The position numbers were made by a program, and so were the translations under genes. Below the pieces are notes generated by a model. That model searched no databases and was not told where the DNA came from. It was given only the letters and a program-made list of their open reading frames with translations. Below are positions 9,578 through 54,719 of a stretch of 64,000 nucleotides of DNA, in pieces. This DNA comes from Styela clava (taxonomy: Eukaryota). The number at the start of each line of letters is the position of its first letter. Within the stretch, counting starts at the first letter, position 1. The stretch is from NCBI RefSeq assembly GCF_964204865.1, contig NC_135254.1, forward strand, positions 10,664,001 to 10,728,000, read 5' to 3'.

Positions 9578-12500
9578 TCAAGCATCATATTCATTTTCAG
9601 GCATTGAATTGATGTACGGATGTTCTTTTGTTGTACGATCATTCATTTCTTCGTTCTGATGATCTCCGTCTTTTATTTCTTCATAATTATGTGGGATTTC
9701 ATAATTTCCTTCTTTCTCTTCTCTTAACTCATTATTTCGGGAGTTCAATTGTGATGTTTGAATTTTATCATATTTTTCATAAGAAACCGGGACGTCATTA
9801 ACAACCTCATTCATCTCTGAAAGACGTTGTGGTTGAGTTGCGATTTTTTGAGAATTCCTTCTGTAAACAACAAAAAGGTTAGAAATAGTTCTCACATAGG
9901 CTTTTGAATAAGAAACAATGAATTTGAGACAATTTCTTGAATTGCTTCTGTTATAGAGGACTTAGACGTTATTGTGATCGATAGACACAAAACTCTGGAC
10001 GAAAATGTTAGAGCCCAGTATCTCAGCCATTGTTCCGGACACTGAGAATGGATATACGACTGTATAAAAAGTTTTATTACACTTACTCAATTGAGATGAA
10101 ATACTCAAAATCAGTGAAAATATACACATTTTGCTGTAGTATCGATCATTTCTCACCTCATTACTTTGCATCTACGAATCAGCAAACCAATTCCAAATAA
10201 AATGGCTGCAAGAATCAATGTGACTATGGATGAGACAATTGAAACCAATAAATTGTTGTGGTCTGCAATATAATTCAACAAATAAAAGGATAATAAATTA
10301 AAAAAAAAACTATCAGGATAGGACAAAATAGTTGTTTAGAAAACCTAATTTTGTGCACTTAAGATTATTGTCTCTCATAATTTGTAATCTATATAATCTT
10401 ACCACCAGAAGTGGAAGTCGATGTGGTAGTAGTGATTGCACTAGTTGGAAAGAGAATGTTTATCGCCGTAGTTTTTGTGTTGTTCGCATTAGCAGACAAT
10501 GTGGGAGTATGTGTCATGTCTCTAGGAATTGTAAATGTGGTAGTCATTTTAACAGTTACCGCGGTGGATGTTGTATCACAGGCAGTGTCTCCTGAACAAT
10601 TGGTCGTCTGAAGGAAGCAATTGTGTTTAGCAATTTTTTGATTCAATACGTTGTACAATAATCTTTATATATTTCAACAGTCATTTAAATCCCGAGTTTA
10701 ATTAATGTTTTTCAAAAAGTAAAAATATAAAAACCCAAAAGATAAAAAAAAATATACATTAATTCACACGCTAATGAAAAATATCGAAAGTGAATGATTT
10801 AGATAAATCAGAAACTTTTTTGGAGAATTTGTACATATTCAGTTCATGCGCCCCGAATCAGAAGTATAGCGGGGATGACCCTGAAGGATGCGGCTTACTA
10901 CTAAAACAATATAGCATGATGATCATTTTTCTTTAGCCCTTTAGAAGATCGAAAATTATTAACTTACTACAAAAAATGGCATTTTTTATTTCTTACCTCA
11001 AAATTAGAACCAATGCAAATATTGGGCCTCGTCCTTCCCGAGTCAATGCATGTTCTATAGCGTTCTTTCATCATTGAGCTGCAGTTGCATGTACTCCATG
11101 ATGACCACGTTTCCCAATATCTTCCTGCACATTGTAAAGATAATCTTAATTCAGAATTACCGCGCGCATACTCTTTTCATCGATGTTGTTGATGATGCAT
11201 ATTCAAACTATATCATATTCAAACTTTTCTGCCTTTTTAATTTGTTGTTTTCCTCAGATAGTTATAGATCAAGAGTCAGATTTATTTTTATCATCGTTGA
11301 AACTAAGTGAAGTTGGAGTTCGTGTTAAATTCAAATTACTTTTCGTCTTTTCCGTTATACTAAAAACCTATTTTTAACATTTATACTGTTCTAATCACAC
11401 AGCAAAAGTATATTCGCGCTGGAGTTGATTGTATTGGAGCTATGTTAAATAAATTTAAAACAGTTTGACCTGTCACCTCATTTCTCCTTATTTTTTATTT
11501 TTCAACTTTAATATCAGAAAAAATATGTTAAAAATTCATTTTTACTCGCTGTCGCAAGTTATTTTACTCACCGATATGGCGTTGACAAACGAACCCTTTT
11601 AACCCTGTTGCTCCGGTGAAACAGTCCATCGTATGCCATAGAAGATTTGCGTCATAAGTTTTTTGTTCACCTATCGATACACAAGTCTCTGTTCCACTGA
11701 TATGATTGTTTGGTTCTCCTTCATCCCAAAGAGGGAATGAAAGGTTCCTTCCATCGTTCCATTGAAATATCGACTTCGATTTGTCATAAACAAGTCCAAT
11801 GTAGAATGTGTATGGTTCTCCTGTAATAAAACATATCAAATTGTTTTATACTAGTAGGACACGTTTGGACAAGTGTTTTAGCGATGGTCGAGCAGTTGAA
11901 GCGTTAGCTCTAACTGTGTTGGCATTCCAGATTACGCATCTCAGTTTTAAAAGCCATCCCACGTCACCCCTGGGTGTAATATATTGGTCAGACAATGCAA
12001 AACACTAATAGAAGCTCCTTATATATTGTTAGATATCAGTGGTTTTTGCACGGGTCCGCGTTCGCGTCCTCGTGGGTGTCATATCCCACAAGGAACGGAC
12101 TCGTTGCATTTCGTTCGTAATGCCATCAACGACCGAAATTATTATATCGCCGCAATACATACACATTCATTGACTTTTAATACTTACAATAATGCACGTA
12201 CCTGATCCATCAGAAATGAGTGCTTTTATAAATCTTTGTGTTATTTCATTCTTTATTAATGCTAATTCGCCTCCTTCATTTTTGCAAAATGTTTTCGAAT
12301 ATTCATAAGAACTTGAACTACCACCCGGTGAAACATAATATTCATAACTTCCATTGGGAAACCAGTTTCCTCGACCTGTTTCACAAATGAAATACCAAAT
12401 ATTTGAAAAATACCAGAATCTCGAAACATGCGCAGCGAAAATGCACGGTGGAACGAGATGCCATCAGGTATTGCAGGCGCTTGGTTTACTTTAAATACTA

Positions 12501-15099
12501 AAGTCAAAAATAAAGAGAAGCGGTAATATAGGGACTATTTAAAATTTTTTGGAATATTAGCTATTTTATCACCTTTTGATTAGAGCGAATAGCATAGTTA
12601 AAGGCAACGGCGTTGAGTCAGTGGAAACATTCGTAACATAATTACAAAAAGACGTGTGTTCGACGTGACTTATGTGAAAGAGTTTAACAGAGCCCATTGT
12701 TCATTTCCCAATCTCTTTTTAGCATTAATTGTAATAAATGGTCAGTTTTCGGGAAATGAAGACGTAATAATATAAATTTAAAATGAGTTTTCCATTCTCA
12801 CCTAGTTGAGTCGGAGCTGTGTTCATAAAGGCACAGGTAGCGGATGGCGTGCATATCTAAAAACAACGTTCAAATTGTTCATTCGGCATGCAAGTATTTT
12901 AACCGAGCTAACTATAATAAACAAGCATTTTGAACGGAAAGTCAATCATAATAAGTTATATATCTAAAACAAGTTTACTTCAGACTGTGTTGCCGTGTCA
13001 TTGCATGAGTATGGACCAATTCTTCCGCTGTCAACACAAGTTCGGTTACGCTGTCTTATTCCCGGGCATTCACAACTTCCCCAAGACTCCAATGATCCCT
13101 AGTTCCAGCCTGCAGAAACATACAAAGAAAAATAGGAGGTATATTCTTTACAACTAAGTATTCTGGATCAATTTTTTATCAGTAAATGTAAATCAAGGTG
13201 AACTGTTAATACAGTATGAGCGGCAGAAACAATAGCATAGATGTGCAAGGTATATAAGTAGTGATAAGATCAAAAACAGTTAGATAGTTTTGCTTGCAGT
13301 AAATTTATGATATTGTGAAACTGCTTTCTTTAAACATAATTTATCCAGTTAAATTTAAAATATTGGACCCAGATAACCCAATTCTCAATTTTTCTTAAGA
13401 GTATTTGCTCAAAGCAAAGTTAGTCGCACTCATTCGGAATAAAGAATACTAGTATCTGATAAATATACGGGCGGTAGCTAAAATGCCAAGTGTCACTGCA
13501 ATTATACAGTATTTCGTTGGTGCAATAAACACCAGCGGATGCCTGCTGATGCGTTACTACAAGCAGTTCAAATTAATGCTATAATGAGCATAATCATGGG
13601 CAGTAACTCTTGACATGGTTACAATTTATCAAATTGGCGTTAAAATATATAAATAGGTATTTGCAAAAAGATTTTGACTCTTGTGTTTTACAAAGTTCAG
13701 ACGACCATTTATTGCATAAAAGATTAGTCCGTATTCACAAAAAATATATAATCTACAAATTAAGTATAAATTTATTACAAACAAATGTTATTACCGATTA
13801 ATCGTTGACAGACAAATCCAGTTGGTAAATTCGCAGCGCAATCGACGTCAGACCACGGTAGATTTGCAATATACGTGTGAAACCACCCTATAGCACCACA
13901 AGGTTGGGGTCTCCCACTAGAAGGTTCTCCTGCGTTCCAGTTAGTGTAGGTTAGTTCTGAATTGTCATTCCATATGAAGGTATTACTTGTGCCAACTTCC
14001 TTTAAGCCAATATAAAATCCATATGGTGTTCCTGTAAGTGTAGACAATAAAATGCTGTAGAGCAGGGTTTGTCAAACTGGGGCCCTCGGGCCCGCGGTAC
14101 GTGTTGACTGCACAGAGAGTCCGCAACGATATGAAAAGATTGTGATTGATCTTTAACGATTGATCTTAATCAACAAGTCATAGCATCTTTTTGGTTCAGC
14201 TTTGTGGACAAATATTGCAGTCAGTAAAAGCGATTTCAATTTCATTGCTATTTGCGACGATCTACATTGTGAGGCAGCATTTTTAGCTCTTACCAATATG
14301 ATGACAAAATACAAGTCGAGACTTGTCGTATAATCGAACCTACAAGTTTACTAGTCACAAATTGCTCAAGAATCGATAAATTGAGCAGTGAAAAGCATTA
14401 TTACCGTTTATGTTGTTATGTTGACAAAACAAATTCTTTCCCCGTTGGTTAGGCGCAAAAACTGATACGGGGTCTGTCAAACCTAAGATTCACAAATAGG
14501 GGTCAGACCCAAAAAGTTTGGGAAACCCTGCTTTAGAGTAATAAAAAGTTTTGTCGTGTGTAATATTTGTTGAATGTAAACATCACTGGTTGGAACTGTT
14601 GGAGATAAATGAAACTATATTCTTATATATGACGACTGACGAATTAAACAATTCTCAAACAAACGTATGGAGTATTCTAACGCAAATCCTAAAACGCACG
14701 AACAAAGATTCTAATGATCATAACGTTAAATACTCTTAAGCAAATTCATTCCGGGATCTGGGGTAAAGCGTAAAATGTCCTGTTTACCTGAGGTAGCTGA
14801 GACTTGATTCTGAATAAACGTTTGAATCTCGCTAGTTTTTATCATTGCCATCTCACCATCATTGTTTTTACAGAATGTTTCACCATCAGCATATGATTTT
14901 ATATCTCCATTTCCAGATACGTAGTATTGGTAACTTCCAAATGCATTCCACTCACCTCTACCTGGTCGCAAAAATAAAGAGTTTATCAATCAGCACATAC
15001 TTTGAAAGACATGATAATATATAATATATGCCAACCTGCGCTAACGACGGCAACCATCCAAGCAAATATTCCAACGAATATCAAACGTTGTTCTTTCAT
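9578..15099 (-). pseudogene. B1: SP-CTL-TSP1-CTL-TSP1-stalk-TM-tyrosine tail receptor with a premature stop
   Basis: Exons 15099-15036, 14961-14788, 14031-13795, 13109-12979, 12856-12802, 12375-12202, 11820-11572, 11124-10997, 10607-10403, 10262-10157, 9860-9578 all join in frame. TAG at 13101-13099 replaces the TGG present in A2. TM is LLVSIVSSIVTLILAAILFGIGLLI. Confidence 0.82.
14063..14530. mobile_element. hAT (Charlie-like) MITE in B1 intron 2, longer form
   Basis: Ends CAGGGTTTGTCAAACT / AGTTTGGGAAACCCTG, flanked by CTGTAGAG / CTTTAGAG (8-bp TSD, 1 mismatch). Confidence 0.85.
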
Positions 15100-18891: not shown

Positions 18892-21800
18892 TTATTTAAT
18901 GTTGTCAATATTTGCATATGGATCATCGTTTACTTCAATGTCAGCCCCTTCGGCATCTCCCGTGACATCGGAATTCTGATCTGTTTCAGGTTTATTGATC
19001 GTTGCATAAGTTACTTCATTGAAGTTTGAAGAATCATCTTTTCTGGGTTTCTGTACAACAAGGGTCACTTTATTGTCGTCTCCATCTGAAGATGTTTCCT
19101 GTTTCACGGGTTCTTTCGATTTGGTCTTCTGCACGGTAGCGTAAGTCGGACTAGGCACTAGCTTTTCATCAAAAGAATTTTCTGGTTGCGACATTTTTTT
19201 AGAATCCTCAACATAGTGCTTTTGAACCGTTGCGTAAACCACAGGGGAGTTCTCGTCAGGGTAACCAGAAACATTACATTTTTCACTCATTTTTTGCTTA
19301 TCAACAACAGCGTATTGAGTTTCTGATACATCTGCCGCATCCAAATCTTTTGAGAATTTGGATACCTTTTTCGAATTTGTCTTGTTTACAGCAGTATATA
19401 AAGCATTGTCGTTGCCTTCTGTGGTCACATCGTTTATCTGATTCTGATGGTTATCGGCAATGGCGTAGAGGGAATCTTGCCCGTTTGATGAGTCAACTTG
19501 ATCTTCGGGTAAGAGAGAATTATTGTCTGCGTGTCCATCAGGGTTTGCAAACGTCTGATAACGAAGAGTTTCCGTATTTTGAGAATTGTCTCGACCTGAT
19601 TCCACATCTTCGGGATCTGTAGCAGTAAAACATGTTAGTGATATATATTAATATGAATCAGCTGTTTTGACACACTTGAAGCATTTTCGTTTGGAGGAGT
19701 TGGAAAATAGGTCGGAGCCATTCAGATTAACTGACTACATTTGGATACGGACTCATACACCCTATTACCTACTCGAGTTACTTATATTAATATAATAAAC
19801 CAAAACTGAATGCATGATGAAGTTCATTAGAAACAACAATTATGAATTGTTACTGGAAAGATTCTATTTAGTATAGGTTGGTATCGTTGCAACAGGTTGT
19901 GAGTTAAATGTAACATCTTATCTTGTTTTACGCTTCTCTGTGTAGTATTCCTATATGCTATATATTCTCAATATATTTCCCACAAAATCACTTTTTTCCC
20001 ATTAGGCATATAGCTCAAATAAGATAATCATATGTTGCACATTTTGGGGGCTCCCGAAGTATGCGAACCAAGATGGCGGACATCGGAATGTAATATGTGT
20101 ATTAGGTTAAGGTTAGGCCATAATATTAGGTATAAATACTACGGGAGGCTCTTGGCTAGTCTTCGAACTGATAATAGGACTAAAATGAGGAAAATTGGAA
20201 AAAAATTATCGCCTAACCCTAACCTGTTACCCATGTTACGTTCCGATGTCCGCCATCTTGGTTCGCATACTTCGGGAGCACCCCTTTTTGTTTGTCATAC
20301 ATTTACTAGCATGTGGTGGACAGTAAAGTATAAGAATTCATCAACGCAGGTAGAATACGTTGACGTAATACTTTAAATGAAGTTACATTAACTTACGATC
20401 TGACATTATATCTCTCGAATTAAGTTGATTTTCCATTTCTAAATCTTTATGGTAATTGCAACGATCTCCTGTGTTTATGATTCCGCGGCCTCTTCTGAAA
20501 GCAAAACTTTAGATTGTATGCATTCTCGGTGAAATGAGTAAACCCTTAAAAAGATATTTGGTATTTTTTCACTATTCATAAAAGATGTAATGTCATAATG
20601 TTGGGTATATTACCTTTTTTTGAGTTGCTTTGAAAGTATAAAAACAATGATAAGCGCTAAAAGAAGACACCCTCCGATAGTTCCCACGACTGGTCCAATG
20701 ATTGATGTTTGTGCAGCGGGTGTAAATGAACGAAGAATTCCAATCGTCGAAATGTCAGGAATTTCTGTGTGAGATAATATAGGAATTAATATCAGTACAA
20801 TATAAATGATCAGAAATCTAATTTAATACATTATGTTCATTTAACACATTTTTGCGAGCTGAAATTGAATTTAAAATATTTTGCAACGCTCACATTTGAA
20901 AATTAATCGTACGAAAGTTATTTGACTGCTTCATCATGATGTTATACATTTGAACATTCTAATTGGTCTTTTGATCGATGAACAAATGTTGGCCACGTTC
21001 TCGCGTGCATTTTAATAAATGACTCAATTGTAGAAAAGGTGAAACTGATTGTATAAACTTATTATTTGTTATGGCAATGCTGTTATAATCATCCCACGTT
21101 ACGTTTGTTGAAATTATTTGAGTTTGGTTTAAGGAGGATTTTGTCAATATTAACTCTGATCAAATATAGATTGTTGCTTTCATGCAGCTACTAGTATAGG
21201 ATCAAGCCATAAAATTATAAATTGCTGTTATTTTGCGCGTTGCGTGTTGATTGCTACTAGATTCTGGATTGGTAATGACTGTAGAATTCTGCTCAAAGCA
21301 TGTAGTGGCGGCAGTAGACGTAGAATCAGTGTTTGTGGGAGTAGAATCAGATTGAGTAATTCTTCCGGTGGTTGTTTTCATTACCGTTGTTGCTGTAGAC
21401 AAAATTGGCGATGTGACTTCACAATTATTTCATTGACTCGTTTCGTACGTTGATTGTATAATTGTACTTGTAGGGATAGTGGTTTCCAGTGAGCTACTTG
21501 GTATTTCACCGCTACCGAAAGTTGTCATTTCACTTGCCGTCGTCGTCCTCTTCTCATTTATCTGTGTGAGAGACATGGTTGAAGGCCCTGTAATCATCGT
21601 GCTTTCCGTATTAAAAACGTGGCTGTTCGGCGATCTGGATAGTTGAATGGGTAAAAATTTATGCCCGTTCCTTCAGTGCTATTAATTTTAAATTAAGATG
21701 TGAATTAAAAAGTCACTGTCGTCATTTGGTCTTCTTCCGTGCCTGCAAATGAAGAAGAAGTGCCTTGCAAGTTAAAGTTTGCGTTTGCCACAACATACAC

Positions 21801-23738
21801 ACCGGTAGTCATGGTAGTCATTACTTCGGTGGGTTCTTCGTTTGTTGACGAGGTGGTTAACTCATCAGCAGTTGTAGTTAATGGAGATGTTGTTTCCGCA
21901 ACAGTAGTGGTATAACAAGTTGGGTCTTTTGTACAATTTGCAGTCTGTTAAAAATATTAAATCAAACTAAAAGAAAATTGAAATTGATCAGTATAATTAC
22001 AATTCCCAAGCATGGCTTTAAATGGCAAAAGTTTCTGTAACATACCCAGAAAGCATTAATATTTTCAATATACACAGGTTATGATATACAATAGTATCAC
22101 TCTGATTCTTCCACCGCCAAAACGATTTGATCATGCCGTGGAAATAAGTTCTACGCTATACGCTATATTATTTTGAGGTTCAAGATCATCTCTAACATGC
22201 TAAAGTAGATTATTCCGAATGAAGAATGCCATCACTTTATAACGTGGTTACTCGAGAATGAAAAACTATCATTCATTATAGCTGTGTATAAATTTGACAT
22301 TGAGTTCAATCTACACTGCAGTACAAAATTGCAGATAAAATAAACAACCACGACGACAAGAAAATTATAAAATGTACACATTAAATATTTAGCTTCTTCA
22401 TACCTCATTGTGACTGCCAACGCAGGCATCGGGCCCTGTTCGCGGAGAATTGATGCAAGTGCGATTTCTCAATTTGATTATGGTTGAGCAGTTACATTCA
22501 CTCCAAGAAGACCAGGTTCCCCAGTATTTACCTATATTGGAACTGTTATTTTTTATAAATGCAATCAGCTAGATAGTAATATACCTAAATATACAATGGG
22601 GGTGGTTCAGCAAAGTTCGCATTGACTATGAAGTCAATGTCATTAAAATATATAAATATTTATTTGTATAAAGAAATAGGAATTGAGTGGCAAATTTAGT
22701 ATACATTTATTACAAACAAAGTTTTTTACCGATTACTCGTTGACAGACAAATCCAGTTGGCGAATTCTTAGCGCATTCGACGTCATACCACGGTAGATTT
22801 GCAAAATACGCGTTAAACCACCCCATAGCAACACACGGTTCAGGTTTATCACTAGACGGTTCTCCTGAGTTCCAGTTAGTGTAAGTTAGTTCCGAATTGT
22901 CATTCCATATGAAGGTATTGTTTGTGCCAACTTCCTTTAATCCAATATAAAATCCATAGGGTTGTCCTGTAGACAATAAAATGCTTTAAAGCAGAATTTC
23001 CCAAACTGGGGTCTTTTAGCTAAATTGAGCAGTAAAAGCATTAATGACGTGTGTGTTGCTGCATTAATGAAACATTATCCTTCCTCATCTTTCCTCCTGG
23101 TTAGATACATAAATTGATGCGGCATATGATAGGGGTCCGACAATACTAAGATTCACAAATAGGGGTACGCGACTTAAAAAGTTTGGGAAACCCTGCTTCA
23201 GATTAATGGAAAGTGATGTAAGGTTGTATGTAAACATGGCTGGTTAGGACTGTTGGACATAATTGAAAAGAGGTGCAAATATGTAAAGACTGACGAATTC
23301 TCAGACAAACGTATTGAGAATTCTAACCCAAATCACGAAACGCATGAACAAAGATAAAGACCATAATGTTAAATAACCTTAAGCAAATTCATTTCGGGAT
23401 TTGAGGTAAAACGTGAAATGTCCTGTTTACCTGAGGTAGCTGAGACTTGATTCTGAATAAACGTTTGAATCTCGCTAGTTTTTATCATTGCCATCTCACC
23501 ATCATTGTTTTTACAGAATGTTTCACCATCAGCATATGGTTTTATATCTTTTTCTCCAGATACGTAGTATTGGTAACTTCCAAATGCATTCCAATTACCT
23601 CTACCTTGTCGTAAAATAAAGAGTTTATGAATGAGCACATAACTTGAAAGACATGATATATAATAGATACCAACCTGCGCTAACGACAGCAATCATCCAA
23701 GCAAATAATCCAATGTATATAATAGGTTTCTTATTCAT
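18892..23738 (-). CDS. A1: SP-CTL-TSP1-S/T stalk-TM-ITIM/ITSM tail receptor (about 572 aa)
   Basis: Exons 23738-23675, 23604-23431, 22966-22730, 22531-22404, 21944-21803, 20764-20614, 20494-20397, 19616-18892 total 1719 nt, open. TSP1 WGTWSSWSEC...RNRTC; TM IIGPVVGTIGGCLLLALIIVFIL; tail TQYAVV, VVYATV, VTYATI. The donor at 21803 (G|GTGTGT) is inferred from phase. Confidence 0.85.
20046..20284. mobile_element. MITE with long TIRs in an A1 intron
   Basis: GCTCCCGAAGTATGCGAACCAAGATGGCGGACATCGGAA at the left end and its reverse complement at the right end, with T-runs on both flanks. Absent at the paralogous A2 site (about 49310). Confidence 0.9.
22992..23195. mobile_element. Short hAT-type MITE in A1 intron 2
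   Basis: Same termini and intron position as 20-223. Confidence 0.75.
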
Positions 23739-38100: not shown

Positions 38101-41100
38101 TACCAGTATCATGATTATTTGGTTCTCCTTCACCCCAAAAAGAGAATGACAAGTTTGTTCCATCGTTCCATTGGAACATCGACTTTGATTTTTCATAAAC
38201 GAGTCCAATGTAGAATGTGTATGGTACTCCTGTAATAAGACATATCATATTGATTTATACCCCTAGGACACGTCTAGACAAGTGTTTTAGCGATGACCAA
38301 TCGGTTGAAGCGTACGAAGTAATTATGTTGGCATTACAGATTATTGTTAGATATCAGTTGGGTTTGTACAGGGACTTGTTCGCTAACTAAGCGTTGAATC
38401 CCACGAGAAACGGGCCTATTGCATTCCGTTCGTGATGCCATCAACGATCGAAGTTATTATATCGTCGCAGTACATACATTCCATTGGCTTTCAATGCTTA
38501 AAATAATGCACGTACCTGATTCATCAGAAATGAGTGTTTTTATAAATCCTTGAGTTAATTCATTCTTTATTAATGCAAATTCTCCCTCGCTATTTTTGCA
38601 AAATGTTTTCGAATCTTCATAAGATCTTGATCTACCCGCCGGTGAAACGTAATATTCATAAGTTCCGTTAGGAAACCAGTTTCCTCGGCCTGTTTCACAA
38701 ATAAAATATCGAATAATTGAAAAATATCAGTAACTCGAGAAATGCACGGTGGAACAAGATGGCATCAATTGCAGGCACTTGCTTTAACTTCAATACCGAA
38801 GTGGGAAATAAAGATAAACGTTGATATATTGACGCATTTAAATTTTTCGATTATAAGCCGTTTTAGCACTTTCGGATTAGAGCGAATGGCATAGTAAAAG
38901 CAACGGCGTGATTCAGTGGAGACATTCGTAACCTAGTTACAAAAAAAGAAGTTGGCTTCGACGTGACTTATGTGAAAGAGAATAACAAGCCCATTGTTTA
39001 TATCTCTTTTTTTTGCAACAATTGTAATAACTGGTCAGTATGCTGGGGACTGAAAACGTAACAATATAATTTTACAATGAATTTTTCATTCTCACCTGGT
39101 GGAGTCGGAGTTGTGGTCAATAAAGGCATAGTTGCATTGCAAGAAGCGGATGGCGTGCATATCTAAAAACAACGTTAAATTGTTCAATCGTGCATGTAGG
39201 TGTGTTAATCGAACTAACTGTAAGTCCAAAATATAATCAAAAAAAAAATAATTCTGTAACAATAAAATCCAAATTAATGGGGACCAGACTGGATTTGCAA
39301 GTCACATTTAAAATTAGAATTGGATTATGGAATTATTTCGATACGTTAGTCAATTTGTTTTAATTAATAACTAAGTATGACTAAACTGACTTGAATAAAT
39401 TTATCTGAGTGGAAATGCTGGATGTAGCTAAATAATGTCGTCGATGAAGTTGAGTACAAAAATATACCAAACGATAGTTGTATAATGTAAGTGTGTGTCA
39501 ACAGTGTGCATGAGAAAAAATGTTATTCCCATTTAGAAGTTATCGTTTTGGAACGACAAACTAATCGACATGCTAGAACTTTATAAAAACCCAATCTTAT
39601 ATGTAACAGTCATCAATACAGCTAGGTAATGAGTATTTTGAACGGAAACACAATCATAATGCGTTATATATGTAAACCAAGTTTACTTCCGACTGTGTTG
39701 CTGTATCATTGCAAGAGTTTGGACCAATTCTTCCGCTGTCAACACATGTTCGGTTACGCTGCCTTATTCCCTGGCATTCACGACTTCCCCAAGACTCCCA
39801 TGATCCCAAGTTCAAACCTGCAGAAACATACAGATCAATATAAGAATTATACAACTAATTATTTGGAAGCAGTTTTTTTATCAGTAAATGTAAATCAAGA
39901 TGAACTGTTAATACAGTATGAGCGGTATAGAAACATTAGCATAGCTGTGCAAGGTATATATAAACAGTGATAAAAGGTCATTATTAAAACTTTAATTAAT
40001 ACATGAAAAGAATGTTTTTTGCGCTAATAGCAAATCAAAAGCAGTTAGTTAGTTTTGCTTGCAGTAAATTTATGATATTGTGAAACTGCTTTCTTTAATA
40101 AACATAATTTATCTAGTAAAATTTTAAACATTGGACAGATAACCCAATTCTAAATTTTCCTCAAGACAATTTTCTCAAAGTAAAGTTAGTCGCACTCATT
40201 CGGAATAAAGAATACTAGTATTTGATAAAAATACGGGCTGTGGCTGAAATGCCAAGTGTCACTGAAATTATACAGTATTTTGGTGGTGCAATAAACACCA
40301 GCGGATGCCTGATGCCTGTGGTAATACAAGCAGTTCAAATCAATGCTATAATGAGCATAATCACGGGCAGTAACTCTTGACATGGTTAAAATTTACTAAA
40401 TTGGCGTTAAAATATATAAATAGGTATTTGCAAAAAGATTATAACTCTTGTGTTTTACAAAGTTCAGACAACCATTTATTGCATAAAAGATTAGGCCGTA
40501 TTCACAACAAATACATAACCTACAAATTAAGTATATATTTATTACAAACAAATGTTTTTACCGATTAATCGTTGACAGACAAATCCAGTTGGCGAATTCG
40601 CAGCGCAATTGACGTCATACCACGGTAGATTTAAAAAATATACGTTAAACCATCCCATAGCACCACAAGGTTGGGATCTCTCACTAGAAGGTTCTCCTGA
40701 GTTCCAGTTAGTGTAAGTTAGTTCAGAATTGTCATTCCACATGAAGGTATTGCTTGTGCCAACTTCCTTTAATCCAATATAAAATCCATAGGGTTGTCCT
40801 GTAGACAATAAAATGCCTTAGAGAAAAAAAAAGTTTTGTCGTGTGTAATATTTGTTGTATGTAAACATGATTGGTTGGGACTGTTGGACATTATTGTAAA
40901 CATGTACAAATATATGAACACTGACGGTTTATAAAATAAAACAAAAAACGTAAAATGTTCTATTTATATATACCTGAAGTAGCTGAGACTTGATTCTGAA
41001 TAAACGTTTGAATCTCGCTTGTTTTTATCATTGCCATCTCCCCACTATTGTTTTTACAGAATATTTCACCATAAACATAAGACTTTATATCTCCTTTTCC

Positions 41101-41273
41101 AGATACGAAGTATTGGTAACTACCAAATGCATTCCACTCACCTCTACCTGGTCGCAAAAATAAAGAGTTTATGAATAAGCACATAATATGAAAGACCGGA
41201 TGATATACGATATATACCAACCTGCGTTAACGACGGCGATCATCCAAGCAAATATCAAAAGTTGCTCTTTCAT
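35176..41273 (-). CDS. B2: intact SP-CTL-TSP1-CTL-TSP1-stalk-TM receptor with activating-type tyrosine tail (about 603 aa)
   Basis: Exons 41273-41222, 41147-40974, 40798-40562, 39817-39687, 39162-39096, 38689-38516, 38229-37978, 36797-36670, 36299-36092, 35878-35773, 35458-35176 total 1812 nt, open. CTL1 has EPS/WYD and CTL2 has EPN. Tail: YYEIPHNYEEIKDENHQYEEM...PYINS. Confidence 0.88.
37163..37270 (+). mobile_element. Decayed hAT transposase C-terminal fragment in a B2 intron
   Basis: Reads NFPTLRDFALRI*SML*STYICRSTF, resembling the hAT dimerisation-domain motif, with two stops. Confidence 0.55.
37311..37715. mobile_element. hAT (Charlie-like) MITE in a B2 intron
   Basis: TIR CAGGGGTCGGCAACC / GGTTGTCCACCCCTG; TSD ACCTACAT / GCCTACAT. 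Confidence 0.88.
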
Positions 41274-48154: not shown

Positions 48155-51100
48155 TTATTCAATGTTGTCAATATTTGCATATGGATCATCGTTTACTTCA
48201 ATGTCAGCCCCTTCGGCATCTCCCGTGACATCGGAATTCTGATCTGTTTCAGATTTATTGACCGTTGCATAAGTTACTTCATTGAAGTTTGAAGAATCAT
48301 CTTTTTTGGGTTTCTGTACAACAGCAAGGGTCACTTTATTGTCGTCTCCATCTGAAGATGTTTCCTGTTTCACGGGGTCTTTCGATTTGGTCTTCTGCAC
48401 GGTAGCGTAAGTCGGACCAGGCACTAGCTTTCCATCAAAGGTATTTTCTGGTTGCGACATTTTTTCAGAATCCACAACATTGTGTTTTTGAACCGTTGCG
48501 TAAACCTCAGGGGTGTTCTCGTCAGGATAACAAGAAACATTAATTATTTCGCTCTTTTTTTGCTTATCAACGAAAGCGTATTGAGTTTCTGATACATCTG
48601 CCGCATCCAAATCTTTTGAGGATTTAAATAACTTTTTCGATTTTGTCTTGTTTACAGCAGTATATATAGCATTGTCGTTGCCTTCTGGGGTCACATCGTT
48701 TATCTGATTCTGATGGTTATCGGCAATGGCGTGGAGGGAATCTTGCCCGTTTGATGAGTCAACTTGATCTTCGGGTAAGTGAGAATTATTGTCTGCCTGT
48801 CCATCAGGGTTTACAAACGTCTGATAACGGAGAGTTTCCGTATTTTGAGAATGGTCTCGACCTAATTCCACATCTTCGGGATCTGTAGCAGTAAAACATG
48901 TTAGTGATAAATATTAATATGAAGCAGCTGTTTTGACACACTTGAAGCATTTTCGTTTGGAGGAGTTGGAAAATAGGTCGGAGCCATTCAGATTAACTGA
49001 CTACAGATTTGAATAAGGATTCATACAAGCTATTACCTACTCGAGTTACTTATTTTAATATAATCACCATAACTGAATGCATGATGAAGTTCATTAGAAA
49101 CAACAATTCTGAATTTTTACGTGGAAAGATTCTATTTAGTATCGGTTGGTATCGTTGCAACAGGTTGTGATTTAAATGTAACACCTTTTCTTGTTTTACG
49201 CTTCTCTGTGTAGTATTCCTATATGCTATATATTCTTAATATATTTCCCGCAAAATCACTTTTTTCCCATTAGGCATATAGTTCAAATAAGATAATCATA
49301 TGGTGCACATAGAAATGAGTATTCCTTTTTGTTTGTCATACATTTACTAGCATGTGATGGACAGTAAAGTATAAGAATTCATCAACCCAGATAGAATACG
49401 TTGACGTAATACTTTAAATGAAGTTACATTAACTTACGATCTGACATTATATCTCTCGGATTAAGTTGATTTTCCATTTCTAACCCTTCATTGTAATTAC
49501 AACGATCTCCTGTGTTTATGATTCCGCGGCCTCTGCTGAAAGCAAAACTTTAGATTATATGCATTCTCGGTGAAATGAGTAAACCCCTATTAAAAAGATA
49601 TTTGGTATTTGTTCACTATTCATAAAAGATGTAATGTCATAATGTTGGATATACTACCTTTTTTTGAGTTGCTTTGAAAGTATAAAAACAATGATAAGCG
49701 CTAAAAGAAGAAACCCTCCGATAATTCCCACGACTGGCCCAATAATTGATGTTTGTGCAGCGGGTGTAGATGGACGAAGAATTCCAATCGTCGAAATTTC
49801 AGGAACTTCTGTGTGAGATAATATAGGAATTAATATCAGTACAATATAAATGATCAGAAAATTGATTTAATACATTATGTTCATTTAAACAAGCTGACAC
49901 ATTTTCGCGAGCTGAAACTGAATTTAAAATATTTTGCAACGCTACCATTTGAAAATTAATCGTACGAAAGTTATTTGACTGCTTCATTCTGATGTTATAC
50001 ATTTGAACATTCTAATTGGTCTTTTGATCGATGAACAAATGTTGGCCACGTTCTCGCGTGCATTTTAATAAATGACTCAATTGTAGAAAAGGTGAAACTG
50101 ATTGTATAAACTTATGATTTGTTATGGTAAACTATTGCTAATGCTGTTATAATCATCCCACGTTACGTTTGTTGGTATTATTTGAATTTGGTTTAAGGCG
50201 GATTTTGCCAATATTAACTCTGATCAAATATAGATTGTTGCTTTCATGCAGCTACTAGTATAGGATCAAGCCATAAAATTATAAATTGCTGTTATTTTGC
50301 GCGTTGCGTGTTGATTGCTACTAGATTCCGGATTGGTAATGACTGTAAAATTCTGCTCAAAGCTTGTAGTGGCGGCAGTAGACGTGGAATCAGTGTTTGT
50401 GGGAGTAGAATCAAACTGAGTAATTCTTCCGGTGGTTGTTTTCATTACAGTTGTTGCTGTAGACAAAATGGGTGATGTGACTTCAAAATTACTTCCTTCG
50501 CTCGTTTCGTACGTTGATTGTCTAATTGTACTTGCAGGGATAGTGGTTTCCAATGAGCTACTTGGTATTTCTGCGCTACCGAAAGTTGTCTCATTTGCCA
50601 TCGTCGTTCTCCTCTCATTTATCTGTGTGAGAGACATGGTTGAAGGCCTGTAATCATCGTGCTTTCCGTATTAAAAGCGTGGCTGATCGGCGATCTGGAT
50701 AGTTGAATGGGCAAAAATTTATGCCCGTTCAGTGCTATTAATTCTAAATTTAGATGTGAATTAAAAAGTCACTGTCGTCATTTGGTCTTGTTCCGTACCT
50801 GCGAATGAAGATGAAGTGCCGTGCAAGTTAAAGGTTGCGTTTGCCACAACATACACACCGGTAGTCATGGTAGTCATTACGTCGGTGGGTTCTTCGTTTG
50901 TGGACGAGGTGGTTAACTCACCAGCAGTTGTAGTTAATTGAAATGTGGTTTCCGCAACTGTAGTCGTATAACAAGCCGGGTCTTTTGTACAATTTGCAGT
51001 CTGTTAAAAATATTAAATCAAACTAAGGGAAAATTGAAATTGATCACTATTATTACTATTCCCAAACAGTACTTTTAAATGGCAAAAGTTTCTGTAACAT

Positions 51101-54100
51101 ACCCGGAAAGCAATAATATTTTAAATATACACAGGCTATGATATACAATAGTATCACTCTGATTATTCCACCGCCAAAACGATTTGATCATGCCGTGGAA
51201 ATAAGTTCGACGTTATACGCTATATTATTTTGAGGTTCAAGACCCTCTCTAACATGCTTAAGTAGATTATTCCGAATGGAGAATGCCATCACTTTATAAC
51301 GTGGTTACTCGAGAATGAAAAACTATCATTTGATATAGCTGTGAATAAATTTGACATCGAGTTAAAGCTACACTGCAGTACAAAACTGCAGATAAAATAA
51401 ACAACAACGACGACAAAAAAATAATAAAATGTACACATTAAATATTTAGCTTCTACATACCTCATTGCGGCTGCCAGCGCAGGCATCGAGCCTTGTTCGC
51501 GGAGAATTAATGCATGTGCGATTTCTCAATTTGATTATGGTTGAGCAGTTACATTCACTCCAAGAAGACCAGGTTCCCCAGTATTTACCTATATTGGAAC
51601 TGTTATTTTTTTATAAATGCAATCAGCTAGATAGTAATATATATAGATATACAAAGGGGGTTTTCAGCAAAGTTCTAACTTTCTAACAAACTTTTTTGCA
51701 AAATGTTCTCGAATCTTCATAAGATCCTGAACTACCATCCGTTGGAACATAGTATTCATAACTTCCATTAGAAAACCAGATTCCTCGATCTGTTTCACCA
51801 ATTAAATATCAAATAATAGAATAATGACAGTATCTCGAAAAATGCGCAGTGAAAATGCGTGAGCTAGTGAAAACAATTGAAAAATAATTACGAAAAATAG
51901 TTGGCTTTGGCGTGACTCATATGGAAGCGAATAACAGAGCCCATTGTTCATATATCCCATCTCTTTTCCCCGACGATTGCAATAAGTGTCCAGTTTGATG
52001 GGAAATGAAGACGTAACATGGGTTTTTCATTCTCACCTTGTGGAGTCGGAGCTGTGGTCACTAACGGCATAGTTGCATTGCAGGAAGCGGATGGCGTGCA
52101 TATCTAAAAACAACGTTCAATTTGTTCAATCGTGCATGTAGGTGTTTTAACTAAACTAAATGTAAGTCAAAAATTTAATATTTAATGTAGAATGATCAAA
52201 AAATGATTGGCAATGAAATCCGAATTAGTTGGGTCCGGACTGAAGGGTTCGCAAGTCACATTCAAAATTGGATTATGGAAATATTTTGATACGTCAATCA
52301 ATCTGAATTAGTAACAAAATACGACTAAACTGACTTGAATAAATTTACCTGGGTGGCAATTCTAGGTGTGGCTATTAATGTCGTCGATGAAGTTAGGGAC
52401 AAAAATCTACAAAACGGTTGTTATATAACGTAATTGAGTCTCAACATGGATATGTATGGGTATTTTTTTTTTATTTCATTGGAAAGTTAGTTTTCGAACG
52501 ACACACTAATCGACATGCTAGGACCCTATAAAATCCTAAACTTAAATTTAATAGTTATCAAAATAGCCAGGTAATAAGGAAGCATTTTGAACGAAAACAC
52601 AATCATAATGAGCTATATACAGTGGTGGGATTCAGCCGGTTCGCACCGGTTCTATAGAACCGTCTCACGGAATTTTATGAGATCAGCGAACCGGTTAGCA
52701 TTACTGGTTACTGTCAATGTTATATTTGTAACAGATCCGGCTGAAAAAGATGACTTTAGTGAAGGAACCGGCTGACAAAAAATTTGAACCCACCACTGGT
52801 TATATATATATATATATATGTAAAACAATTTTACTTCAAACTGTGATGCCGTATCGTTGCATGAGTATGGACCAATTCTTCCGCTGTCAACACAAGTTCG
52901 GTTTCGCTGCCTCATTCCGGGGCATTCACAGCTTCCCCAGGACTCCCATGATCCCCAATTCCAGCCTGCAGAAACATGTAGATTAAAATATTCGTTATAT
53001 ATTTTACAACCGAGTATTTCAAAGCAATATGATATCAGTAAATTTAAATCAAGATGAACTGTTAATACAATATGAGCGGTAGAAAAAATAGCATAGCTGT
53101 GCATAGTATAAATAACGATGAGATGACATTATGGAAACGTTAAAACATTTTCAAAATCTTTCCTGCACTTATAGCTAATCGAAAAAAGTTTTGTACGGAA
53201 TATTTTAGATGAAATTCAGCTGACACGTTTTTGGCGGTTTTATCGAAAACTGAGATTTCTTCTGACAGTAATTTAATAATATGGCGCTGCTTTCTTTATT
53301 AAACATAATTTATCCAGTTAAATTTAAAACATCTGACCCAGTTAACTCAATTCTCATTTTTTTATAGGAGATTTTACTCAAAGAAAAGTCAGTCGCAATC
53401 ACTCGAAAAATGTAAACTAGTGTCTGATTAAAATGCGCGCAGTCGCAGAGATGCCAAGTGCTACTGAAATCAAACAGTATTTTAATGGTGCAATAAGCAA
53501 CAGCGAATACCTGATGAAGTGATACTTGAAGCACTTTAAATCGATGCTATAAAGTATGAGGCAGTAAACATGGCATGAATAAAATTTACTAGATTGGAGT
53601 CAATGTCATTAAAAATATATAAATATTTATTTGTATAAAGAAATAGAAATTGCGTGGAAAATTTAGTATACATTTATTACAAATAAAGTTTTTTACCGAT
53701 TACTCGTTGACAGACAAATGCAGTTGGCGAATTCGCAGTGCAATTGACGTCATACCACGGTAGATTTGCATAATACGTGTGCCACCACCCCATAGCAACA
53801 CAAGGTTCAGGTTTATCACTAGAAGGTTCTCCTGAGTTCCAGTTAGTGTAAGTTAGTTCCGAATTGTCATTCCAGATGAAGGTATCGTTTGTGCCAACTT
53901 CCTTTAATCCAATATAAAACCCATAGGGTTGTCCTGTAGACAATAAGATGCTTTAGAGCAGAATTTCCCAAACTGGGCTCCCTTAGCTTAATTGAGCAGT
54001 AAAAAGCATTAATGACGTTTGTGTTGCTACATATATGAAACATTATCCTTCCTCATCCTTTCTCCTGGTTAGACACATAAATTGATTCGGCATACCATAG

Positions 54101-54719
54101 GGATCCGACAAAACTAAGATTTACAAATATGGGTACGCGACTTAAAAAGTTTGGGAAACCCTGCTTCAGATTAATGGAAAGTTATGTAAGGTTGTATGTA
54201 AACATGGCTGGTTAGGACTGTTGTACATAATTGAAAACAGGTAAAACAAATACGTAAAGACTGACGAATTAAAAATTCTCAAACCAACGTATTGAGAATT
54301 CCAACACAAATCCCAAAACGCATGAACAAAGATAAAAATCATAATGTTAAATAACCTTAAGCAAATTCATTTCGGGATTTGGGGTAAAACGTGAAATGTC
54401 TTGTTTACCTGAGGTAGCTGAGACTTGATTCTGAATAAACATTTGAATCTCGCTAGTTTTTATCATTGCTATCTCACCATCATTGTTTTTACAGAATGTT
54501 TCACCATCAACATAGGATTTTTTATCATCTTTTCCAGATACGTAGTATTGGTAACTTCCAAATGCATTCCACTTACCTCTACCTTGTCGTAAAATAAAGA
54601 GTTTATGAATAAGCACATCATTTGAAAGTCATGATGATATATAGTATATGCCAACCTGCGCTAACGACGGCAACCATCCAAGCAAAAATCCCAACGAATA
54701 TCAAAAGATTCTCCTTCAT
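48155..54719 (-). CDS. A2: SP-CTL-TSP1-TSP1-stalk-TM-ITIM/ITSM tail receptor (about 639 aa if the broken CTL2 exon is skipped)
   Basis: Exons 54719-54656, 54582-54409, 53933-53697, 52965-52835, 52103-52037, 51588-51461, 51000-50859, 49808-49658, 49535-49438, 48882-48155 total 1920 nt, open. A truncated CTL2 exon remnant lies at 51789-51692. Tail TQYAFV, EVYATV, PTYATV, VTYATV. Confidence 0.8.
52620..52798. mobile_element. hAT-type MITE in A2 intron 4
   Basis: TIR CAGTGGTGGGATTCA / TGAACCCACCACTG; TSD GCTATATA / GTTATATA. Empty at the paralogous B1 and B2 sites. Confidence 0.85.
53959..54163. mobile_element. Short hAT-type MITE in A2 intron 2
   Basis: Same termini and position as 20-223; left TSD CTTTAGAG. 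Confidence 0.75.

What the first reader, a model, noticed from the sequence alone, without database searches (positions are those of the whole stretch)
9578..54719. Paired inhibitory/activating C-type lectin-TSP1 receptors in one tandem cassette
Seen: genes A and B have closely similar signal peptide and CTL1 exons plus homologous TSP1 exons, but unrelated TM and cytoplasmic exons. A tails carry ITIM (VVYATV, VTYATI/V) and ITSM (TQYAVV/TQYAFV) motifs. The intact B tail carries YEEI-x6-YEEM and YINS. Known: similar ectodomains with opposing tails in a gene cluster define vertebrate paired receptors (Ly49, KIR, Siglec, DCIR/DCAR). Inference: this is an independently built invertebrate paired-receptor system on a type I CTL+TSP1 scaffold, for self/non-self or pathogen discrimination. 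I do not recognise the family, but cannot confirm novelty without a search.
Basis: partly seen in the sequence, partly recalled or inferred. Interest (0 to 1): 0.92.

Follow-up and report, generated by a model that had tools for sequence, protein, structure and literature searches.

The report
Sea-squirt lectin receptors with opposing tails
The sea squirt Styela clava has a tandem cluster of at least 24 uncharacterised cell-surface lectin receptors that share one outer recognition part but carry one of two unrelated inner tails, one resembling vertebrate inhibitory immune receptors and one resembling activating ones; whether the tails signal in opposite directions has not been tested.

Summary
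The window is Styela clava C5:10,664,001-10,728,000. On the minus strand it holds B1, A1, B2 and A2, plus the 5' end of A0.

- **Gene models:** RefSeq models ("uncharacterized protein") map at 100% with GT-AG introns for A1, A2 and B2.
- **Architecture:** signal peptide, mannose-receptor-like C-type lectin domain(s), TSP1 repeat(s), Ser/Thr stalk, one TM, tail.
- **Shared and unshared parts:** A and B share DNA, introns and about 350 bp upstream included, at 75-90% as far as the TSP1-2 exon. TM and tails are unrelated.
- **A tails:** six conserved Yxx[V/I] sites, including canonical ITIMs and an ITSM.
- **B tails:** YEIP, YEEI-x6-YEEM (ITAM-like, not canonical) and YINS.
- **Not a simple pair:** the genome holds 8 A tails (5 intact) and 16 B tails, all within 0.34 Mb.
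- **Transcription:** RNA contigs cover B exons only and show the predicted splice joints.
- **Binding loop:** the CTL1 ligand-binding loop is hypervariable (omega about 1.85).
- **Relatives:** none outside S. clava, and no paper describes the family.

Opposing inhibitory/activating signalling is plausible but inferred (about 0.45). An endocytic role is the main rival. B1 has an in-frame stop. This scan had separately noted ITIM-tailed CUB receptor clusters on other DNA of this genome.

The parts
48158..54719 (-). Gene A2 (RefSeq LOC120344702 isoform X2, 658 aa). Order of parts: signal peptide, CTL1, TSP1-1, linker, TSP1-2, stalk, TM, juxtamembrane exon, long tail. Exons: 54719-54656, 54582-54409, 53933-53697, 52965-52835, 52103-52037, 51588-51461, 51000-50799, 49808-49658, 49532-49438, 48882-48158.
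   Evidence: P0167 maps at 100% with GT-AG introns. Pfam Lectin_C E=3.2e-15 and TSP_1 E=2.2e-7.
48158..48882 (-). A2 cytoplasmic tail exon. Holds canonical ITIM VTYATV (48260-48277), ITSM TQYAFV (48569-48586), and further YTAV, YATV (twice) and YANI sites.
   Evidence: Six Yxx[ILV] sites against 1.4 expected, p=0.0006.
49658..49808 (-). A2 TM exon. The membrane span is glycine-rich and has no charged residue. Phase 1 in, phase 2 out.
51686..51808 (-). Remnant of the CTL2a exon, lying in an A2 intron. It is not part of the RefSeq model. The rest of CTL2 is deleted.
35179..41273 (-). Gene B2 (RefSeq LOC144422857, 603 aa). Order of parts: signal peptide, CTL1, TSP1-1, linker, CTL2, TSP1-2, stalk, TM, short acidic tail. 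Exons: 41273-41222, 41147-40974, 40798-40562, 39817-39687, 39162-39096, 38689-38516, 38229-37978, 36797-36670, 36299-36092, 35878-35773, 35458-35179.
   Evidence: P0173 maps at 100% with GT-AG introns. Pfam Lectin_C (two domains) E=1.1e-25 and TSP_1. RNA contigs lie on exons only, with spliced joints at 40797/40973 and 39162/39687 in all 4 runs.
35179..35458 (-). B2 tail exon. Holds YEIP (35290-35301), ITAM-like YEEI-x6-YEEM (35242-35283) and YIN(S) (35206-35214).
   Evidence: These tyrosines are kept in 15-16 of 16 B tails. RNA contigs end at or within about 10 bases of the 35458 acceptor (records 24, 11, 9).
35773..35878 (-). B2 TM exon. No charged residue in the membrane span. Phase 1 in, phase 2 out, the same phases as the A-type TM exon.
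18895..23777 (-). Gene A1 (RefSeq LOC144422856, 585 aa). Order of parts: signal peptide, CTL1, one TSP1, stalk, TM, juxtamembrane exon, tail. Exons: 23777-23675, 23604-23431, 22966-22730, 22531-22404, 21944-21803, 20764-20614, 20494-20397, 19616-18895. Relative to A2 it lacks 1.9 kb carrying TSP1-1, the linker and the CTL2a remnant.
   Evidence: P0169 maps at 100%. Self-BLAST. RNA-type runs hold 8-17% of its sampled words.
18895..19616 (-). A1 tail exon. Holds ITIMs VVYATV (19225-19242) and VTYATI (18997-19014), ITSM TQYAVV (19303-19320), and further YTAV, YATV and YANI sites.
9581..15099 (-). Gene B1 (RefSeq LOC144422855, 602 aa), with the same layout as B2. Approximate exons: 15099-15036, 14961-14788, 14031-13795, TSP1-1 about 13110-12976, CTL2a 12382-12200, CTL2b 11839-11567, TSP1-2 11125-10988, stalk 10613-10404, TM 10266-10156, tail 9868-9581. 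It is probably defective.
   Evidence: Canonical splicing of the TSP1-1 exon reads an in-frame TAG. RefSeq bridges it with a micro-exon of about 14 nt. The tail has NEEM instead of YEEM.
418..787 (-). 5' end of gene A0 (RefSeq LOC144422996): signal-peptide exon and CTL1a exon. The rest lies left of the window, where its tail is cut by a TAG after the ITSM.
53697..53933 (-). CTL1b exon of A2. Equivalent exons: 22730-22966 in A1, 40562-40798 in B2, about 13795-14031 in B1. It holds the hypervariable loop between EP[ST] and W[YSF]D, which is the canonical C-type-lectin ligand site.
   Evidence: Loop pN/pS 1.69 against 0.35-0.53 in the flanks. N:S changes 52:7 against 89.5:48.5, Fisher p=0.0009. 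Alignment to mannose-receptor lectin domains.
54720..55176 (-). Upstream region of A2. It is homologous (79-83%) to the upstream region of B2 at 41274-41789. A1 and B1 show the same relation at 85%.

Best explanation
What it is. The window holds four and a half members of a Styela clava-specific tandem family of type I membrane receptors. At least 24 genes lie on C5 between 10.51 and 10.85 Mb.

Each protein has these parts in order:
- a signal peptide;
- one to three or more mannose-receptor-like C-type lectin domains alternating with TSP1 repeats, encoded as phase-1 symmetric exon modules that can be gained or lost in frame;
- a Ser/Thr-rich stalk;
- one TM helix.

The family comes in two forms. 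They share the 5' half, upstream region included, and carry two unrelated 3' cassettes:
- **A:** a glycine-rich TM and a tail of about 280 aa. The tail has six conserved Yxx[V/I] sites, among them canonical ITIMs and an ITSM.
- **B:** a tail of about 100 aa, acidic, with YEIP, YEEI-x6-YEEM (ITAM-like) and YINS.

How it most likely works (inferred, not shown). The variable loop of the outermost lectin domain binds a ligand. The loop lacks the Asn residues of the EPN and WND motifs, so the ligand may be a protein or a non-classical glycan. Src-family kinases then phosphorylate the tails. A tails would recruit tandem-SH2 phosphatases, SHIP or Csk and dampen the cell. B tails would recruit Src/Syk-type kinases, PI3K p85 (YxxM) and Grb2 (YxN) and activate it. 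The cell would integrate the two signals, as cells do with CEACAM1/CEACAM3 or Fc-gamma-RIIB/IIA.
For: Shown here:
- Gene structures are exact against RefSeq models.
- Pfam domains are present.
- The 5' homology includes introns and the upstream region, and it ends at the start of the stalk exon.
- The tails are unrelated.
- The motifs are located. Core Yxx[ILV] is enriched in A tails, p 0.0005-0.004.
- The B motif tyrosines are kept in 15-16 of 16 copies.
- There are 8 A tails and 16 B tails, all in one 0.34-Mb cluster. The map of 228 kb shows 11 B and 4 A genes with varying module numbers.
- On the CTL1 tree the A and B labels are intermixed (3 changes against 3.6 when shuffled). An A-type gene with the full two-lectin B-like ectodomain exists (P0168/P0005).
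- B-type exons are transcribed and spliced at the predicted sites in 4 runs. The same runs also hold A1 words.
- The ligand-site loop is hypervariable.

From the literature:
- Ascidians have Src, Syk, SHP-1, SHIP, PI3K and Grb2 homologues (PMC12582321).
- ITAM-like motifs plus YxNx are typical of the activating CEACAM partners (PMC5112662).
Against: - No functional data exist.
- B has no canonical ITAM: there is no acidic residue at -3, and M stands at +3 of the second tyrosine.
- B has no charged TM residue for an adaptor.
- Canonical ITIMs are few. A2 has one, and their count is not beyond chance on its own.
- Tyrosine columns are no better conserved than other columns, 0.89-0.91 against 0.89-0.90, because the paralogues are young.
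- Tail pN/pS is only moderately below 1, at 0.52-0.73.
- Within the window the A genes are closer to each other than to the B genes. The A/B split therefore predates the cassette duplications, and no A/B pair has identical binding loops.
- The ratio of B to A is 2:1, not 1:1.
- The TM-to-tail splice joint was not among the joints listed.
- Cell type and co-expression at the cell level are unknown.
Confidence: 0.45

Rival explanations
1. These are endocytic or scavenger lectin receptors. The Yxx-hydrophobic sites are AP-2 sorting signals, and the two tails direct different trafficking routes rather than signals of opposite sign.
For: - The lectin domains are closest to the endocytic mannose-receptor family: MRC1, DEC-205, PLA2R and Endo180. 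RefSeq names some members 'macrophage mannose receptor 1-like'.
- Every YATV, YEEI and YEEM site also fits YxxPhi.
- The papers themselves box 'endocytic or ITAM-like' motifs together (PMC5112662).
Against: - Six repeated YxxV sites, an ITSM and V/I at -2 are more than sorting needs.
- Own knowledge: YEEI is the preferred Src-SH2 site, YxxM the preferred p85 site and YxN the preferred Grb2 site.
- The other domains that define the mannose-receptor family (ricin-type, FNII, 8-10 lectin domains) are absent.
Confidence: 0.2
2. Both tails are generic phosphotyrosine docking platforms of the same or a context-dependent sign. The family would then serve adhesion, phagocytosis or a non-immune recognition task, such as gamete or settlement recognition or tunic and tissue morphogenesis, rather than paired immune inhibition and activation.
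For: - More distant S. clava paralogues at other loci (P0094, P0174, P0078, P0164), and class C (P0095), also pair a lectin domain, with or without TSP1, with long Tyr-rich tails of yet other sequence.
- TSP1 repeats are common in matrix and adhesion proteins.
- The tissue of expression is unknown.
- Weak language-model leads point to multi-tyrosine adaptors of either sign: PAG/LIME1 for A, A36R/SCIMP for B, with scores of 0.76-0.79.
Against: Hypervariable binding loops, copy-number expansion, pseudogenes and module shuffling are typical of immune or allorecognition families. The ITIM/ITSM-like against ITAM-like dichotomy is clean across all 24 tails.
Confidence: 0.25
3. This is a decaying gene array of little function. 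The motifs would be chance features of low-complexity tails copied by recent duplication.
For: - Three of 8 A tails and at least 4 of 16 B tails carry stops or truncations.
- B1 has an in-frame stop.
- Motif conservation is no greater than background.
Against: - Most copies keep open frames through 8-11 exons with intact splice sites.
- pN/pS is 0.33-0.61 in the TSP1, CTL and TM_B exons.
- The genes are transcribed and spliced.
- Nonsynonymous excess is confined to the ligand loop.
Confidence: 0.05

Closest known systems
CEACAM1 / CEACAM3 (and Xenopus Ceacam) paired receptors
   Same: - Type I receptors in a tandem cluster.
- Near-identical ligand-binding ectodomain exons.
- The inhibitory partner has ITIM/ITSM in its own tail.
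- The activating partner has a non-canonical 'ITAM-like' motif plus a Grb2-type YxNx in its own tail, and no adaptor is needed (PMC5112662).
- Fast nonsynonymous change at the binding face.
   Different: The ectodomain is built of Ig domains, not C-type lectin plus TSP1. There is no sequence relationship. CEACAM function is demonstrated, whereas here it is inferred.
NK-complex and myeloid C-type lectin paired receptors (Ly49, CD94/NKG2A-C, DCIR/DCAR)
   Same: - A C-type lectin-like recognition domain without the full Ca/sugar motif.
- A clustered multigene family.
- ITIM-bearing members alongside activating members.
   Different: Those receptors are type II with a single lectin domain. Their activating members have a charged TM residue and borrow ITAM adaptors (DAP12, FcR-gamma). 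Here the receptors are type I with a signal peptide, have TSP1 repeats and a mucin-like stalk, have no charged TM residue, and carry their motifs in the receptor's own tail.
Botryllus schlosseri Fester family / Fester co-receptors (FF/FcoR)
   Same: - The host belongs to the same ascidian family (Styelidae).
- Large, polymorphic, tandemly encoded receptor families.
- Tails carry ITIMs (such as VAYAIV and LAYAIV), hemITAMs and 'core' YxxV or [A/D]VYxxV motifs much like the YATV/YAVV array of the A tail (PMC12582321).
- The signalling machinery is present in ascidians.
   Different: FF and FcoR are Ig-superfamily/sushi proteins. In that system recognition and signalling are split between two co-expressed chains. 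No lectin or TSP1 domains are involved.
Mannose receptor family (MRC1, DEC-205, PLA2R, Endo180)
   Same: These give the best sequence matches for CTL1 (E 3e-23 to 1e-14). Like the family here, they are type I. The 'GEPS' variant of the EPN position is shared with a mannose-receptor lectin domain.
   Different: The family here has no ricin-type or FNII domain and only 1-3 lectin domains instead of 8-10. TSP1 repeats are interleaved between the lectin domains. The tails are different.

Membership tests
Paired inhibitory/activating receptor system (functional class) | Clustered multigene family with highly similar ectodomains | tested here: met
   There are 8 A tails and 16 B tails within 0.34 Mb. 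CTL1 is 80-85% identical at the aa level between A and B. Introns and the upstream region are homologous.
Paired inhibitory/activating receptor system (functional class) | Inhibitory members carry ITIM ([ILVS]xYxx[ILV]) and/or ITSM (TxYxx[VI]) | tested here: met
   A1 has two ITIMs and one ITSM. A2 has one ITIM and one ITSM. This is shown at motif level only, and the count alone is not beyond chance (p 0.05-0.35).
Paired inhibitory/activating receptor system (functional class) | Activating members carry a canonical ITAM ([DE]xxYxx[LI]x6-8Yxx[LI]) or a charged TM residue that pairs with an ITAM adaptor | tested here: not met
   B has YEEI-x6-YEEM: M at +3 of the second tyrosine and no acidic residue at -3. 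There is no charged residue in the TM. It fits only the looser 'ITAM-like' class used for CEACAM3.
Paired inhibitory/activating receptor system (functional class) | Same or overlapping ligand, opposite signalling, co-expression in one cell | not testable with these tools
   The only data are at sample level. The four RNA-type runs that hold A1 words also hold spliced B-type contigs.
C-type lectin-like domain superfamily (PF00059) | Match to Lectin_C above Pfam's cut-off | tested here: met
   E 1.9e-14 to 1.1e-25 and 54-91 bits, against a cut-off of 22.6.
C-type lectin-like domain superfamily (PF00059) | Ca2+/sugar site motifs EPN or QPD together with WND | tested here: not met
   CTL1 has EP[STH]/QPS and W[YSF]D. 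CTL2 has EPN but WHT. Classical Ca-dependent sugar binding is therefore doubtful.
Thrombospondin type 1 repeat (PF00090) | Match to TSP_1 above the cut-off, with the WxxWxxW and CxxC pattern | tested here: met
   22.7-31.4 bits against a cut-off of 21.6 in A1, A2, B1 and B2. The W-x-x-W-x-x-W-G-S-C pattern is visible in the exons.
NK-complex type II C-type lectin receptors (Ly49/NKG2/DCIR) | Type II topology: N-terminal cytoplasmic tail, with the lectin domain C-terminal | tested here: not met
   There is an N-terminal signal peptide, the TM lies after the ectodomain, and the tail is C-terminal.
Mannose receptor family | N-terminal ricin-type domain, FNII domain and 8-10 lectin domains | tested here: not met
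   Pfam finds only Lectin_C and TSP_1.
Botryllus FF/FcoR | Ig-like and sushi ectodomains | tested here: not met
   There is no Ig or sushi match.

The most novel reading that the evidence does not exclude
The cluster is a histocompatibility or self/non-self receptor system of solitary styelid ascidians that works like NK-cell receptors. Polymorphic, loop-diversified lectin-TSP1 receptors would deliver ITIM-type and ITAM-like signals that haemocytes integrate. This would explain the long-known allograft rejection and haemocyte contact reactions in Styela. The ligand might be encoded by the vWA gene that sits head-to-head with the A genes.

One hint comes from two RefSeq releases of a single locus (LOC120344507). 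They differ by 20-30% in the lectin domains but by 0-3% in TM and tail.
Probability: 0.12. Interest if true: 0.9.

Novelty: new variant of a known kind. Interest (0 to 1): 0.64.

Why it matters
Paired activating and inhibitory receptors are a recurring solution for self/non-self discrimination in vertebrates. Whether and how non-vertebrate chordates build such systems is an old question.

So far the only tunicate example is the Ig-type FF/FcoR system of colonial Botryllus, described in 2025. A second system, unrelated to it, would now be available in a solitary styelid with a good genome. It is built on a type I lectin-TSP1 scaffold, carries its signalling motifs in the receptor's own tail, and has a diversifying binding loop.

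It would also provide concrete candidate genes for Styela allorecognition and pathogen sensing.

Tried and rejected
- **No joined exon models.** I neither built nor searched joined exon models of my own. Exons were searched by reference. For whole proteins I used the RefSeq entries that those searches returned.
- **Right half of the cluster.** That part is known only from the 3-kb loci around the tails.
- **Cross-species searches.** Searches for either tail and for the whole A protein found only S. clava. These searches are word-based and bounded by length, so this is not proof of absence.
- **Nearest non-Styela lectin domains.** They are mannose-receptor-like proteins with several lectin domains from hemichordates, echinoderms and molluscs, at 34-42% identity. 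They are not orthologues.
- **Motif conservation.** Motif tyrosines are not conserved above background.
- **Omega above 1 in the loop.** It is suggestive only (binomial p=0.08). The region was delimited after seeing the variability, although it does coincide with the canonical ligand site.
- **CTL1 tree.** It cannot decide between one and several A/B switches, because well-supported branches force only one.
- **A-tail similarity to other Tyr-rich tails.** Similarity to the tails of distant paralogues (P0094, P0095) is at the noise level.
- **ESM-Atlas hits.** They score below or at the edge of significance and are leads only.
- **Read laying.** The splicing of A therefore rests on RefSeq models and on word share in RNA-type runs. 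The B TM-to-tail joint was not among the joints listed.
- **Not run.** Structure prediction and complex prediction were not run, because they would not discriminate between the explanations.


Full report
**Organism and place.** Earlier follow-up notes of this scan name the genome as the sea squirt Styela clava. I confirmed this independently. Every close protein hit is a Styela clava RefSeq entry. The window is G000:C5:10,664,001-10,728,000. It is AT-rich (31-37% GC) and holds no N.

**Checking the observation.**
- A self-comparison shows a tandem cassette. A1 (18.8-23.8 kb) matches A2 (48.1-54.8 kb) at 90-94% nt. B1 (9.5-15.1 kb) matches B2 (35.1-41.4 kb) at 76-90%. A third A-type 5' end (A0) lies at 1-860.
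- An all-against-all HMMER search with the CTL1b exon (collected), followed by a word-based search, returned the RefSeq models.
- P0169 (LOC144422856), P0167 (LOC120344702 X2) and P0173 (LOC144422857) map to A1, A2 and B2 at 100% identity. Every intron is GT-AG.
- P0003 (LOC144422855) is B1. P0171 is A0.
- All are named "uncharacterized protein" or "macrophage mannose receptor 1-like".
- Pfam finds Lectin_C (E 1e-14 to 1e-25) and TSP_1 above the cut-off, and nothing in TM or tails.
Exons were searched by reference, and whole proteins were the database entries returned.

**Anatomy.**
- Each protein is type I: signal peptide, CTL1 (two exons), TSP1-1 plus a 22-aa linker, CTL2 (two exons), TSP1-2, Ser/Thr stalk, TM, tail.
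- The domain modules are phase-1 symmetric. TSP1 plus linker is 131+67 nt and CTL2 is 174+252 nt. This explains family members with one, two, three or more lectin domains.
- In the window the A genes have lost CTL2. A remnant of its first exon sits in an A2 intron. A1 has also lost 1.9 kb carrying TSP1-1.
- Elsewhere in the cluster, an A-type gene keeps the full two-lectin ectodomain (P0168/P0005).
- The A and B TM exons enter in phase 1 and leave in phase 2, so the 3' cassettes are interchangeable in frame.

**Where A and B are alike and where they are not.**
- A2 and B2 align at the DNA level from about 350 bp upstream of the start codon onwards. The alignment runs through CTL1, TSP1-1, the linker, the start of CTL2a and the TSP1-2 exon, introns included, at 75-90%.
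- Protein identities are 84.5% (CTL1a), 80-85% (CTL1b), 82% (TSP1-1), 90% (linker) and 58-59% (TSP1-2).
- Only the first residues of the stalk exon still align (33% identity, E=0.006 for the single comparison).
- TM, juxtamembrane and tail pieces of one type find nothing in genes of the other type. Tail-against-tail BLASTP is at noise level.

**The tails.**
- A tails are about 280 aa long. Their conserved tyrosines are LRYQTF, AIYTAV, TQYAVV, VVYATV, PTYATV, VTYATV/I and DPYANI.
- By the definitions quoted in PMC5112662, A1 has two canonical ITIMs and one ITSM. A2 has one of each, because it has EVYATV at the first site.
- The canonical ITIM count alone is not beyond chance. The core Yxx[ILV] is: 6 of 9-11 tyrosines against 1.4-1.8 expected, p 0.0005-0.004.
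- B tails are about 100 aa long and acidic. They carry YEIP, YEEI (or YEKI), YEEM six residues later, and YINS. These are kept in 16, 16, 15 and 16 of the 16 copies.
- YEEI-x6-YEEM is ITAM-like, not a canonical ITAM. Neither TM holds a charged residue.
- By my own knowledge, YEEI is the preferred Src-SH2 site, YxxM the preferred p85 site and YxN the preferred Grb2 site.
- ITAM-like motifs together with YxNx are what the activating CEACAM partners carry.
- Because the paralogues are young, tyrosine columns are no more conserved than other columns (0.89-0.91 against 0.89-0.90). Tail pN/pS is 0.52 for B and 0.73 for A. Paralogue conservation therefore does not prove constraint on the motifs.

**Family size and layout.**
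- In the whole genome the A tail occurs 8 times, 5 of them intact. The B tail occurs 16 times, of which at least 4 end early after YIN.
- All lie on C5 between 10.51 and 10.85 Mb.
- The 228-kb map shows 11 B and 4 A genes, all on the minus strand, with very different module numbers. It is therefore a multigene family with a B:A ratio of 2:1, not a single pair.
- On a CTL1 tree the A and B labels are intermixed (3 changes against 3.6 for shuffled labels). A_10551 groups with B_10526 (support 89/81). The well-supported branches alone, however, do not exclude a single switch.
- Within the window the A genes are closer to each other than to the B genes. The A/B split therefore predates the local cassette duplications.

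**Recognition surface.**
- CTL1 is closest to lectin domains of the mannose-receptor family.
- Between the EP[ST] position and W[YSF]D, which is the canonical ligand site, the paralogues are hypervariable. pN/pS is 1.69 there, against 0.35-0.53 in the flanks.
- Counted on per-codon minimum spanning trees, N:S changes are 52:7 in the loop against 89.5:48.5 elsewhere. Fisher p is 0.0009, omega is about 1.85, and the test for omega above 1 gives p=0.08.
- The Asn residues of EPN and WND are missing from CTL1, so a protein or non-classical ligand is possible. This is an inference.
- Two RefSeq releases of one locus (LOC120344507, P0005 against P0168) differ by 20-30% in the lectin domains but by 0-3% in TM and tail. 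This fits either high polymorphism or exon exchange. I could not tell which.

**Transcription.**
- Nine small RNA-type runs hold 8-17% of the sampled words of the A1 gene stretch. DNA runs hold 54-58%.
- I laid four of the RNA-type runs on B2 at 88% likeness. Coverage falls on the annotated exons and is zero in five intron bins.
- The joints at 40797/40973 and 39162/39687 have CT..AC ends, which read GT..AG on the gene strand. They are present in all four runs.
- Single contigs bridge CTL1b to CTL2a and TSP1-2 to the stalk. Contigs on the tail exon stop at the 35458 acceptor.
- Most contigs are 88-95% alike, so they come largely from paralogues or other alleles.
- The TM-to-tail joint itself was not among the joints listed.
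- A and B are thus co-present at sample level only.

**Defects.** Canonical splicing of B1's TSP1-1 exon reads a TAG where the paralogues have TGG. RefSeq bridges this with a micro-exon of about 14 nt. The B1 tail has NEEM for YEEM. A0's tail, which lies outside the window, is cut by a TAG after the ITSM.

**Comparison with what is known.**
- No relative with either tail or this architecture was found outside S. clava.
- No paper in the searchable library describes the family.
- The known tunicate C-type lectin receptors, Botryllus CD94 and Ciona CiCD94-1, are type II (PMC5465252).
- The closest functional analogues are CEACAM1/CEACAM3 and the Botryllus FF/FcoR system. FcoR tails carry ITIMs, hemITAMs and YxxV cores. 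That paper also documents Src, Syk, SHP-1, SHIP, PI3K and Grb2 homologues in ascidians (PMC12582321).
- The family is not a member of the NK-complex lectins (wrong topology), nor of the mannose-receptor family (defining domains absent), nor of FF/FcoR (no Ig or sushi).

**Verdict.** The paired-receptor reading fits the anatomy and is the best single explanation. Its key step, opposite signalling on a shared ligand in one cell, is inferred. An endocytic role or a same-sign docking role remains open.

Noticed in passing
window 12976-13110 (-), B1 TSP1-1 exon: There is an in-frame TAG where the paralogues have TGG. The RefSeq model XP_077968869 avoids it with a micro-exon of about 14 nt ('DYIFF'). 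B1 is probably a pseudogene. Alternatively it must skip TSP1-1 plus the linker, which together are in frame.
   Followed up: yes
window 42704-44815 (-) and 16512-16598 (-): These are remnants of a third receptor class C, like P0095 (LOC120344945). That class has a single C-type lectin domain, a TM and a 464-aa Tyr-rich tail. The remnants lie between each A gene and the next B gene. The copy at 42.7-44.8 kb has an internal deletion, and the other is only the last exon.
   Followed up: partly
window 3605-3790 (+) and 57543-57728 (+): vWA-domain exons (Pfam VWA, E=1.8e-10) of a plus-strand gene repeated once per cassette. The gene is head-to-head with the A genes. It is a possible linked ligand or co-factor, as another first-reader note proposes.
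   Followed up: no
window 37179-37778 (B2 intron): A high-copy transcribed repeat. RNA contig depth here is about 165-5,900, against about 1-200 on the B2 exon bins. There are many rearranged joints and loose ends.
   Followed up: no
L036-L037 (C5:10619669-10634941): One B gene spans 15 kb and holds three tandem copies of a CTL2-TSP1-stalk-TSP1-stalk block. This is an ongoing internal expansion of the ectodomain.
   Followed up: partly
P0005 against P0168 (LOC120344507, A-type gene at about C5:10.844 Mb, plus strand): Two RefSeq releases of the same locus differ by 20-30% in both lectin domains but by 0-3% in TM and tail. This points to extreme allelic polymorphism or to exon exchange between paralogues.
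   Followed up: partly
P0094/P0162, P0174, P0078 and P0164 (other S. clava loci): These more distant paralogues (45-56% identity in CTL1b) have the same architecture of lectin, TSP1, stalk and TM. Their long Tyr-rich tails have other sequences. The broader family therefore has several tail types.
   Followed up: partly
P0010/P0161 (LOC144422881, A_10764) and P0172 (A_10746): These A-type genes have broken or internally deleted tails. They would encode receptors that lack most ITIM-like sites, and might act as tail-less decoys if expressed.
   Followed up: no
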